From assembly GCA_026770705.1 (NCBI GenBank), contig JANJGN010003869.1, positions 1 to 33,309 on the forward strand: a stretch of 33,309 nt of DNA, written 5' to 3'. Every line of letters begins with the position of its first letter. The first letter of the stretch is position 1. Origin of the DNA: Isurus oxyrinchus (taxonomy: Eukaryota). Position numbers and translations under genes: made by a program. The notes under the pieces are model-generated. The model was not told the origin of the DNA, ran no database searches, and saw nothing but the letters and a program-made list of their open reading frames with translations. Positions 27,880 through 28,575 of this stretch are shown here, one piece after another.

Positions 27880-28575
27880 TATTATACAAAAAGCTACCAC
27901 CAGGAGCTATCACCACTGCACAGCCAGTGTGTAATACTATAAACCCCCCTCCAGGGTGCAGCATTTCACTGGGAGCCGGGTGTAATACTGTAAATCACCT
28001 CTAGGTGGTAACTTTACAACGGGCGCCTGTTGTAATACTGTAACTCCCCCTCCAGGGTGCAGCTTTGCACTGGGAGCCCGCTGTAATACTGTGGATCAGC
28101 CTCCAGGGGGCAGCTTTACTGCGGGTGTTGTGTGTAGTACCGTCACCCACCCTCCAGGGGGCCGCCTGACACCTGGCCGTGTGTAATACTGCAAGTCTGC
28201 CTCTAGGGGGCAGCTTCACTGAGGGCGTTGCGTGTAATACCATAACCCAGCCTCCAGGGGGCAGCGTTACCCCTGGCCCTGTGTAATACTGTAAGTCTCC
28301 CTCTAGGGGGCAGCGTAACACCTGGCCCCGTGTGATACTGTCAGTCTCCCTCTAGGGGGCAATGTTACACTGGGTCCTGGGTGTCGTACCCCAACCCGCC
28401 CTCCAGGGGGGTATCTTTACTCTGGGTGCCAGAGGTAATGCTCCCACCCACCCTCCAGGGGGCAGCTTTACATTGGGTGTGTACGTGTCAGGCGTAATAC
28501 TGCGCCTCACCCTCCAGGGGGCGGCTTGACGCTAAGTGCCGGGTGTAATACTCCAAGTCTCCACCAGCTGTGGAG
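27880..28575 (+). promoter_or_regulatory. Degenerate ~50-bp tandem array of ~14 CTCF-like sites in intron 1
   Basis: Repeated TGTAATAC-N9/10-CCTC(C/T)AGGGGGCAGC; motifs are conserved while the intervening bases diverge. Confidence 0.75.

What the first reader, a model, noticed from the sequence alone, without database searches (positions are those of the whole stretch)
27880..28575. Phased array of ~14 same-orientation CTCF sites (core plus upstream motif) inside AID intron 1
Seen: cores start at about 27897, 27948, 27998, 28049, 28100, 28151, 28200, 28251, 28300, 28349, 28400, 28452, 28511 and 28561, with a period of mostly 49-52 bp. Most read CCTC(C/T)AGGGGGCAGC and each is preceded 17-18 bp upstream by TGTAATAC or a variant; the two end units are weak. 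Bases between the motifs diverge freely, unlike the near-homogeneous satellites around it. Established: this fits the CTCF core CCASYAGRKGGCRS plus the ZF9-11 upstream motif (TGCART-like), whose two allowed spacings differ by 1 bp, as here. Clustered unidirectional CTCF elements form loop-extrusion super-anchors, as at the Igh 3' end. Inference: an old, selected insulator or anchor ~3 kb from the AID promoter, with motifs pointing towards the promoter and upstream region. It could confine AID enhancers or shield the promoter from satellite heterochromatin. I know of no such array described in Aicda.
Basis: partly seen in the sequence, partly recalled or inferred. Interest (0 to 1): 0.85.

Follow-up and report, generated by a model that had tools for sequence, protein, structure and literature searches.

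The report
CTCF-motif minisatellite in shark AID intron
Inside the first intron of a shark's antibody-mutator gene (AID) lies an old 50-bp tandem repeat whose units have drifted apart everywhere except at a motif matching the binding site of the chromatin-looping protein CTCF, so it is probably a selected multi-site CTCF platform, though no binding data exist.

Summary
All 14 stated core positions are exact. The units repeat every 49-52 bp (one of 59), all on the + strand, in intron 1 of an AID gene on the - strand, 2.8 kb from the ATG. "14 CTCF sites" is an overcount: 8 units pass a CTCF core matrix (p<=3.5e-5), 4 are marginal and 2 are dead. No other site scores in the 33-kb window.

Motif columns are far more conserved between units (0.85-0.86 pairwise identity) than spacer columns (0.54). 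The conservation profile follows the information content of the CTCF matrix (rho 0.73, best of 35 registers).

A related species carries the same array at about 92% identity and single-copy depth. No two units exceed 84% identity, so the array predates that split. It is also a VNTR: unit number differs between contigs and between species.

The "upstream motif" sits in the right window but matches the published consensus at only 5 of 10 bases. CpG depletion equals the flanks, so the array is not a germline-hypomethylated island.

Most likely it is a locus-specific, selectively kept CTCF array that blocks cohesin arriving from the promoter side. Occupancy and insulator function are untested. The scan had noted the same array on another piece of this genome, probably the other haplotype.

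The parts
27878..28592 (+). Diverged minisatellite of 14 head-to-tail units (49-52 bp, one of 59). Each unit is TGTAATAC-like block, about 10 variable bases, CCTCYAGGGGGCAGC core, then about 17 variable bases. Units 1 and 14 are degenerate ends.
27995..28013 (+). unit 3 CTCF-type 19-mer, 11.2 bits (p=3.5e-5)
28097..28115 (+). unit 5 CTCF-type 19-mer, 15.0 bits (p=4e-6)
28197..28215 (+). unit 7 CTCF-type 19-mer, 15.3 bits (p=3e-6)
28248..28266 (+). unit 8 CTCF-type 19-mer, 16.6 bits (p=1.4e-6), the best site in this species; weakened in the related species by a change at 28254
28297..28315 (+). unit 9 CTCF-type 19-mer, 13.7 bits (p=9e-6). Another contig of the same species has an extra 51-bp unit at this core.
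28346..28364 (+). unit 10 CTCF-type 19-mer, 13.2 bits (p=1.2e-5)
28449..28467 (+). unit 12 CTCF-type 19-mer, 11.8 bits (p=2.5e-5)
28508..28526 (+). unit 13 CTCF-type 19-mer, 11.7 bits (p=2.7e-5). The related species has an extra unit here.
28593..28773 (.). Unique flank between the array and the 33-bp satellite. It is single-copy and about 11% diverged in the related species, and serves as the neutral yardstick.
26109..27839 (.). 69-bp homogeneous satellite (25 copies, 95% matches) abutting the array on the exon-2 side
28774..30773 (.). 33-bp homogeneous satellite (60 copies, 93% matches) between the array and the promoter-proximal part of intron 1
31366..31373 (-). coding part of AID exon 1 (ATGGACAG) followed by the GTAAGA donor; intron 1 is 26085-31365
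25666..26084 (-). AID exon corresponding to mammalian exons 2+3 (HAE...PCYEC deaminase core)

Best explanation
The feature is an old, locus-specific minisatellite (VNTR) in AID intron 1. Each 50-bp unit is under constraint to keep a CTCF-type core (CCTCYAGGGGGCAGC) and a second block (TGTAATAC) 6-7 bp upstream of the 19-bp core match, while the rest of the unit drifts.

Inferred mechanism: CTCF zinc fingers 3-7 bind the 8-12 usable cores, all on the + strand. The N-terminal, cohesin-blocking face of each bound CTCF then points to higher coordinates, towards AID exon 1 and the promoter 2.8 kb away. Cohesin extruding from the promoter or upstream side would stall there. The array would act as a redundant one-sided loop anchor and boundary. 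That would keep the promoter and upstream enhancers in one contact domain and separate them from the satellite-filled gene body. It may also slow Pol II entering intron 1.

Shown here: the array, its column-specific conservation, the fit to the CTCF matrix, its age, single-copy status and length polymorphism. Inferred only: binding, cohesin stalling, and any effect on AID expression.
For: - Matrix fit: 8 of 14 units score 11-16.6 bits on the CTCF core matrix (p 3.5e-5 to 1.4e-6). All are on the + strand, and no other hit >=8 bits exists in 33 kb.
- Column-specific conservation: pairwise identity between units 2-13 is 0.86 (upstream block), 0.85 (core) and 0.54 (spacer). This is rank 1 of 51 circular shifts, and no permutation of 20,000 reached it.
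- A minimum-change count I made by hand from the columns printed gives about 15 changes in 23 motif columns against about 49 in 28 spacer columns.
- Shape of constraint: per-position conservation across the 19-mer correlates with CTCF matrix information (Spearman 0.73, p = 4e-4, best of 35 registers; the next best is 0.48). The one freely varying position in the first half of the core is the C/T position that CTCF tolerates.
- Orthologue: contigs of a related species cover 27933-28790 at about 90-94% identity, with the same depth as the unique flank. Units within the array are at most 84% alike and spacers 38-76% alike, so the array predates that split.
- Between species, 7 of 28 listed differences fall in motif columns, which make up 45% of columns (one-sided p = 0.024).
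- Locus-specific: no other copy in the window, single-copy contig depth in both species, and no pile-up among 1.9 Gb of raw reads.
- The mammalian CTCF matrix (threshold 8) marks oriented sites at domain borders in a skate, so it applies to elasmobranchs (PMC10115646).
- The second conserved block lies in the published U-motif window.
Against: - No occupancy, accessibility or contact data could be reached.
- Every unit has T where the CTCF core prefers A (CCT, not CCA; about 10% of bound sites in the matrix).
- TGTAATAC matches the published upstream consensus CTGCAGTTCC at 5 of 10 positions only.
- CpG observed/expected is 0.40 in the array and 0.43 in the flank. The region therefore looks methylated in the germ line, unlike a constitutively occupied 700-bp CTCF platform.
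- Sites 50 bp apart are about one CTCF footprint apart (my own knowledge), so full simultaneous occupancy is doubtful.
- Single sites turn over: the best site here (unit 8) is weakened in the related species, and units 2, 4, 6 and 11 are already impaired.
- The species comparison is incomplete, because 19 differences were not listed.
Its column totals (908-913) and consensus came out as I expected, but it was not checked against a JASPAR file.
Confidence: 0.55

Rival explanations
1. The constrained blocks are bound by proteins other than CTCF. The G-run core could be read by another C2H2 zinc-finger protein (an INSM1-like TGYCAGGGGGCR reader, a lineage-specific ZNF, or an EBF-like factor). The TAAT-containing TGTAATAC block could be read by a homeodomain-type factor. 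The array would then be an intronic enhancer or silencer of AID, like mammalian Aicda 'region 2', not a loop anchor.
For: TGTAATAC is a poor match to the CTCF U consensus, and HOX-type motifs are reported as common in the U window. Mammalian Aicda intron 1 holds silencers and B-cell elements (PMC3628980; title and abstract only). The resemblance to the INSM1 motif is from my memory only.
Against: Conservation spans about 15 bp and follows the CTCF information profile in exactly one register (rho 0.73). It includes the CC at matrix positions 4-5 and the A-G at 9-10, which a GGGGG-reader alone would not need. No motif library was available to score the alternatives.
Confidence: 0.15
2. The array is a neutral, decaying minisatellite whose founder unit happened to contain a CTCF-like word. 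The motif columns look conserved because of uneven mutability (CpG decay in spacers, stable G and C runs), indel misalignment in spacers, or non-independence of units copied as 100-bp dimers.
For: Units are copies, so the eight hits trace to one founding event. A random 50-bp unit has roughly a 1 in 1000 chance of such a word, and this scan looks at very many windows. Some spacer variation is classic CpG decay (ACCGT to ACCAT or ACTGT). CpG is depleted as in bulk DNA. TRF sees a weak 100-bp period, and spacers are slightly more alike at lag 2. Overall divergence between the two species is about 8% in the array and about 11% in the flank, so they are similar.
Against: By my hand count, even the minimum number of changes per column is about 2.7-fold lower in motif columns. 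Many spacer differences are transversions away from any CpG. The conservation profile matches an external matrix in one register only, which mutability does not predict. Spacer identity is 0.54, so the units are homologous and not an alignment artefact.
Confidence: 0.15
3. Selfish maintenance ('molecular drive'): units carrying the core are preferentially duplicated or converted. A protein bound there, or the G-run itself, would stall forks or seed unequal exchange. The motif would then be kept by the repeat's own turnover and not for the benefit of AID regulation.
For: Unit-number changes have breakpoints inside the identical 15-bp cores. One contig of the same species has an extra unit joined at 28300-28314. 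The related species has an extra unit at 28497-28527, and one of its contigs skips 213 bp. The core resembles classical minisatellite 'core' sequences (GGGCAG; my memory).
Against: There is no recent homogenisation: orthologous units (about 92%) are more alike than any two units in the array (<=84%). Turnover is therefore slow, and drive would carry spacers along with cores.
Confidence: 0.1
4. The conserved blocks act in the AID pre-mRNA, which carries the reverse complement (GCUGCCCCCURGAGG and GUAUUACA). They could be intronic splicing or processing signals, or part of a small RNA.
For: The array is transcribed as part of intron 1, and C-rich runs are known protein-binding RNA elements (my own knowledge).
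Against: No Rfam family matches (best E = 0.55-0.78, far below gathering scores). The constraint profile fits a DNA-binding matrix. No test pointed to RNA.
Confidence: 0.05

Closest known systems
Igh 3' CTCF-binding element cluster ('super-anchor', hs5-7 and downstream) and similar clustered same-orientation CTCF boundaries
   Same: About ten co-oriented CTCF-type cores clustered at an antibody-diversification locus and facing the regulated region. Redundancy tolerates loss of single sites.
   Different: Those sites are spread over many kilobases of unique DNA and are shown to bind CTCF and cohesin. Here the sites are units of a 50-bp tandem repeat packed into 0.7 kb inside an intron, with no binding data. 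This comparison rests on my knowledge of the literature and not on a tool result.
CTCF-bound tandem repeats: DXZ4, Firre and other X-linked macrosatellites; D4Z4; the human H19 ICR repeats
   Same: One CTCF site per repeat unit, a sequence that diverges fast while the CTCF site is retained (mouse versus primate DXZ4: PMC3491370 abstract), and copy-number polymorphism.
   Different: Their units are 0.4-3.3 kb and the arrays span tens to hundreds of kb. Here the unit is 50 bp, about one CTCF footprint, and the array is 0.7 kb.
Reiterated CTCF-motif clusters of alphaherpesvirus genomes (HSV-1 CTRL-type insulators)
   Same: Short tandem reiterations that each carry a CTCF-type word and act, in those viruses, as insulators.
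   Different: Viral, much shorter units (pentanucleotide-based), unrelated sequence. Cited from memory; only a passing hit.
Transposon-borne CTCF sites (rodent SINE B2 and similar)
   Same: The CTCF motif is propagated by copying a repeat unit.
   Different: Those are dispersed in thousands of copies. This unit is single-locus by contig depth, raw-read count and window self-comparison.
Mammalian Aicda intron 1 regulatory region ('region 2': silencers plus B-cell elements)
   Same: The first intron of AID as a seat of transcriptional control (PMC3628980; title and abstract only).
   Different: No sequence relation was tested. The mammalian element is described as binding sites for factors such as c-Myb and E2F, not a CTCF array or a tandem repeat. 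A search for Aicda + CTCF + intron 1 found no paper describing such an array.

Membership tests
CTCF binding site (core, ZF3-7) | Match to the CTCF core matrix at the usual threshold | tested here: met
   8 of 14 units score 11-16.6 bits (p<=3.5e-5) and 4 more score p = 2-5e-4. The same matrix with threshold 8 was used in a skate.
CTCF binding site (core, ZF3-7) | Constraint follows the binding specificity: high-information positions are fixed and degenerate positions are free | tested here: met
   Spearman 0.73, best of 35 registers. Only the tolerated C/T position varies in the first half of the core.
CTCF binding site (core, ZF3-7) | Occupied by CTCF in cells (ChIP or footprint) | not testable with these tools
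   No chromatin data were reachable, and the single run search returned only genomic DNA runs.
Extended CTCF site with upstream (ZF9-11) motif | Second motif 6-8 bp upstream of the core | tested here: met
   The conserved TGTAATAC(T) ends 6-7 bp before the 19-mer core. The window is as published.
Extended CTCF site with upstream (ZF9-11) motif | The upstream motif resembles CTGCAGTTCC | tested here: inconclusive
   5 of 10 positions match (6 of 10 in three units), which is about an 8% chance level by my binomial estimate. Consensus. The extended JASPAR matrices were not available.
CTCF loop anchor / insulator ('super-anchor') | Cluster of co-oriented sites | tested here: met
   All hits are on the + strand; the best - strand score inside the array is 6.7 bits.
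CTCF loop anchor / insulator ('super-anchor') | Cohesin accumulation, a contact-map boundary or stripe, enhancer-blocking activity | not testable with these tools
   Needs RAD21 ChIP, Hi-C or Micro-C, and reporter assays.
Minisatellite / VNTR | Head-to-tail units of 10-100 bp | tested here: met
   TRF periods 49/51/100; 14 units aligned.
Minisatellite / VNTR | Unit number varies between alleles or close species | tested here: met
   An extra 51-bp unit in a contig of the same species; an extra unit and a 213-bp-shorter contig in the related species. The other genome piece reports a 751-letter array.
Dispersed transposon-borne CTCF sites | Many copies across the genome | tested here: not met
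   Contig word depth equals the unique flank in three runs. No raw reads at >=80% likeness were laid from 1.9 Gb (weak on its own). No second copy in the window. No whole-genome search was possible.
Germline-hypomethylated region / CpG island | CpG not depleted | tested here: not met
   CpG observed/expected is 0.40 in the array (0.34 in the centre) and 0.43 in the flank.

The most novel reading that the evidence does not exclude
The array is a true, anciently selected CTCF and cohesin 'super-anchor' built from a minisatellite inside AID intron 1. It would be shared well beyond these two species and would set the contact domain, and so the tight expression, of the antibody mutator in cartilaginous fish. 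That would make it a compact, repeat-built boundary element at the root of adaptive immunity, with allelic unit number tuning its strength.
Probability: 0.2. Interest if true: 0.65.

Novelty: new member of a known kind. Interest (0 to 1): 0.45.

Why it matters
AID is a dangerous mutator, and how its expression is confined is only partly understood even in mammals. A redundant, oriented CTCF platform 2.8 kb inside the gene, kept while the repeat around it decays, would be a simple and testable boundary or anchor in the oldest lineage with AID-driven antibody diversification. It would also be a clear case of a minisatellite recruited as an architectural element, with natural unit-number alleles that could serve as a dosage series. 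If CTCF does not bind, the array still shows strong, unexplained column-specific constraint in an intron otherwise filled with satellites.

Tried and rejected
- IUPAC search CCASYAGRKGGCRS with one mismatch: only 6 hits, not clearly above shuffles (2 of 100 shuffles reached 6), because every unit has T at the third position.
- Rfam scan of 27700-28900: only chance-level hits, E = 0.55-0.78.
- Self-comparison of the array and both flanks against the whole window: no other copy.
- Raw reads of an independent genomic run: 0 reads laid from 1.9 Gb (about 4% of the run). The tool itself calls this 'no test'. I use it only to say there is no high-copy pile-up.
- Look-up of earlier scan notes by sequence: blank.
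- CpG-island or hypomethylation reading: rejected.
- PRDM9-type hotspot motif: considered from memory. I think it unlikely, because such motifs erode and are not kept. Not tested.
- Extended JASPAR matrices (core plus upstream motif) and a general motif library: not available, so not run.
- Comparison with AID intron 1 of other sharks, rays or chimaeras: no eukaryotic genome collection is offered, and the single run search found only two species.
- First Pfam attempt failed on frame; repeated correctly.
The N run at 40-183 was left alone.

Full report
**1. What is there**

The window is almost wholly satellite DNA. An AID gene lies on the - strand.
- The - strand reads ATGGACAG followed by a GTAAGA donor at 31373-31366. 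Those eight coding bases match my recollection of mammalian AICDA exon 1.
- A 419-bp exon at 25666-26084 translates to the deaminase core (HAE...PCYEC) and hits AID/APOBEC Pfam families at E about 1e-44.
- A later exon (DYFYCWNTF...) lies near 14.1 kb.

Intron 1 is therefore 26085-31365. Reading along the + strand, it holds:
- a 69-bp satellite (26109-27839);
- the array in question (27878-28592);
- 180 bp of unique DNA;
- a 33-bp satellite (28774-30773);
- about 0.6 kb of G-rich unique DNA next to exon 1.

**2. The observation**

All 14 stated core starts check out: 12 matched my pattern, and the two GGGTG variants at 27948 and 28049 are confirmed by the matrix scan and the sequence. Units are 49-52 bp, with one of 59, and the mean core-to-core distance is 51.2 bp. 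TRF sees the array only as a poor repeat (65-78% matches, periods 49/51/100), while the neighbouring satellites are 89-95% homogeneous. The exact 15-mer CCTC(C/T)AGGGGGCAGC is present in five units, and four more differ by one base. The block (T)GTAATAC or a one-base variant stands 18 bp before the core in 11 units and 17 bp before it in two weak units.

**3. Fit to CTCF**

I scored the window with the JASPAR CTCF core matrix MA0139.1. Its column totals (908-913) and its consensus TGGCCACCAGGGGGCGCTA came out as I expected, but it should be rerun from the file.
- Eight units score 11.2-16.6 bits (exact p 3.5e-5 to 1.4e-6).
- Units 1, 2, 4 and 6 are marginal (p 2-5e-4).
- Units 11 and 14 are dead.
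- All hits are on the + strand. Nothing else in the 33 kb reaches 8 bits on either strand.

Every unit has T where the matrix prefers A (CCT for CCA, about 10% of sites in the matrix). The same matrix with threshold 8 marks oriented sites at domain borders in the little skate, so the mammalian matrix is valid for elasmobranchs (PMC10115646).

**4. Is the motif kept more than the rest?**

Yes. Across units 2-13, mean pairwise identity per column is 0.86 for TGTAATAC, 0.85 for the 15-bp core and 0.54 for the other 28 columns. This contrast ranks first of 51 circular shifts of the labels, and none of 20,000 column permutations reached it.

Units are copies and so not independent. I therefore also counted, by hand from the columns printed, the minimum number of changes per column. 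That gives about 15 in 23 motif columns and about 49 in 28 spacer columns.

The per-position conservation across the 19-mer follows the information content of the CTCF matrix (Spearman 0.73, p = 4e-4). That register is the best of 35 tried; the next best gives 0.48. The only freely varying position in the first half of the core is the C/T position that CTCF tolerates.

Part of the spacer variation is CpG decay (ACCGT giving ACCAT and ACTGT). Many differences, however, are transversions with no CpG nearby. Uneven mutability does not explain the pattern.

**5. Age, copy number and polymorphism**

Contigs of a second, related species cover 27933-28790 at about 90-94% identity. Their word depths (about 9-29 and 1-19 in its two runs) are of the same order as the unique flank (12.4 and 5.7). 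In contigs of the window's own species the array has depth 6.3 against 4.7 for the flank. The array is therefore orthologous and single-copy in both species.

Overall divergence is about 8% in the array and about 11% in the flank, so the array as a whole evolves near the local neutral rate. Of the 28 listed differences inside the array, 7 lie in motif columns, which make up 45% of columns (one-sided p = 0.024). The list is incomplete: 19 differences were not shown.

Single sites turn over. Unit 8, the best site here, is weakened in the other species, while unit 3 reads closer to the array's consensus core there at about the same matrix score.

No two units in the array are more than 84% alike, and spacers are 38-76% alike. 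That is less than the 92% between orthologous units. All unit duplications therefore predate the species split, and there is no recent homogenisation.

The array is also a VNTR:
- A contig of the window's own species carries an extra 51-bp unit joined within the identical cores at 28300-28314.
- The related species has an extra unit at 28497-28527.
- One contig of the related species skips 213 bp.

Earlier notes of this scan report a 751-letter array in AICDA intron 1 on another piece of the same genome, together with the same 419-letter fused exon. 696 + 51 is about 751. I therefore read that piece as probably the other haplotype, but I could not read its sequence.

Raw reads of an independent genomic run gave 0 reads from 1.9 Gb. 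This is too shallow to count a single copy, but it argues against a high-copy dispersed family. The unit and both flanks have no other copy in the window.

**6. The second block**

The published upstream (U) motif lies 6-8 bp upstream of the core and resembles CTGCAGTTCC. TGTAATAC(T) ends 6-7 bp before the 19-mer, so the position is right. It matches only 5 of 10 consensus positions (6 in three units), which is about an 8% chance event by my binomial estimate. The same paper notes that HOX-type (TAAT) motifs are common in that window. The block is clearly constrained, but its reader, whether ZF9-11 or another protein, is open.

**7. Evidence against constitutive occupancy**

CpG observed/expected is 0.40 in the array (0.34 in its centre) and 0.43 in the flank. 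A 700-bp platform occupied in the germ line should escape methylation and keep its CpGs, and this one did not. The cores themselves are CpG-free (GGCAGC, not GGCGC). Binding to methylated DNA or tissue-specific binding therefore remains possible; that is inference.

**8. Orientation and likely mechanism**

Cohesin is held at the ZF3/N-terminal side, which is downstream of the core. With the cores on the + strand, that side faces higher coordinates, towards exon 1 and the promoter at 31.4-31.6 kb.

The most likely working model is a redundant one-sided anchor or boundary. It would retain cohesin arriving from the promoter and upstream side, keep the promoter with its upstream enhancers, and separate them from the satellite-rich gene body. 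A promoter-proximal tether for distal enhancers or a Pol II roadblock in intron 1 are variants of this model. No - strand partner site lies within the window. All of this is inference.

**9. Rivals**
- Another DNA-binding protein reads the blocks, giving an intronic enhancer or silencer as in mammalian Aicda intron 1 (PMC3628980; title and abstract only).
- Neutral decay with uneven mutability.
- Selfish maintenance through repeat turnover; the unit-number breakpoints do lie in the cores.
- An RNA-level role; Rfam is negative.

The single-register fit to the CTCF profile favours CTCF over all of these. Without occupancy data I hold the CTCF reading at about 0.55.

**10. Comparison and novelty**

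Tandem repeats with one CTCF site per unit are known. DXZ4 keeps CTCF binding while its sequence diverges (PMC3491370). Firre, D4Z4, the H19 ICR repeats and the herpesvirus reiterations are further examples from my own knowledge. Clustered co-oriented sites are known as strong anchors at the Igh 3' end (my own knowledge).

New here are the very short unit (about one footprint), the compact 0.7-kb size, the intronic position in AID and the host lineage. A full-text search for Aicda, CTCF and intron 1 found no description of such an array. I class it as a new member of a known kind, of moderate interest. The interest would rise if CTCF and cohesin occupancy and deeper conservation were shown.

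**Limits**
- No eukaryotic genome collection, motif library or chromatin data were available.
- The species comparison rests on short contigs and a truncated difference list.
- The matrix was remembered.

Noticed in passing
window 25666-26084 (-), 31366-31373 (-), about 14050-14170 (-): The AID gene has the mammalian exon 2 and exon 3 sequence in one 419-bp exon. Exon 1 codes only ATGGACAG, the same eight bases I recall for mammalian AICDA exon 1. This agrees with earlier notes of the scan.
   Followed up: partly
window 14315-15846, 26109-27839, 31603-33107: The same 69-bp satellite occurs three times in one orientation. One copy starts about 230 bp upstream of the AID ATG, so the promoter is squeezed between a satellite and exon 1. 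Another copy ends 25 bp from the exon 2/3 acceptor.
   Followed up: no
window 312-1647 and 28774-30773: The 33-bp satellite appears twice in opposite orientation (the units are reverse complements), 27 kb apart, bracketing most of the gene.
   Followed up: no
window 15848-19202 and 19251-25652: A purine-rich (GGAGGTGGTGAGG)n array directly abuts a 6.4-kb C-rich 35-bp array (GC 0.79, CpG observed/expected 1.24). The two share the complementary words GGTGGTGG and CCACCACC. The C-rich array ends 14 bp from the AID exon 2/3 donor side. This is a CpG-island-like satellite inside the gene.
   Followed up: no
window 28300-28314; 28497-28527; 27997-28211: Unit-number variants of the array, with breakpoints inside the identical cores: an extra 51-bp unit in another contig of the same species, an extra unit in the related species, and a low-depth contig that skips 213 bp.
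   Followed up: partly
window 28598: The related species has a 19-bp insertion in the unique flank just after the array.
   Followed up: no
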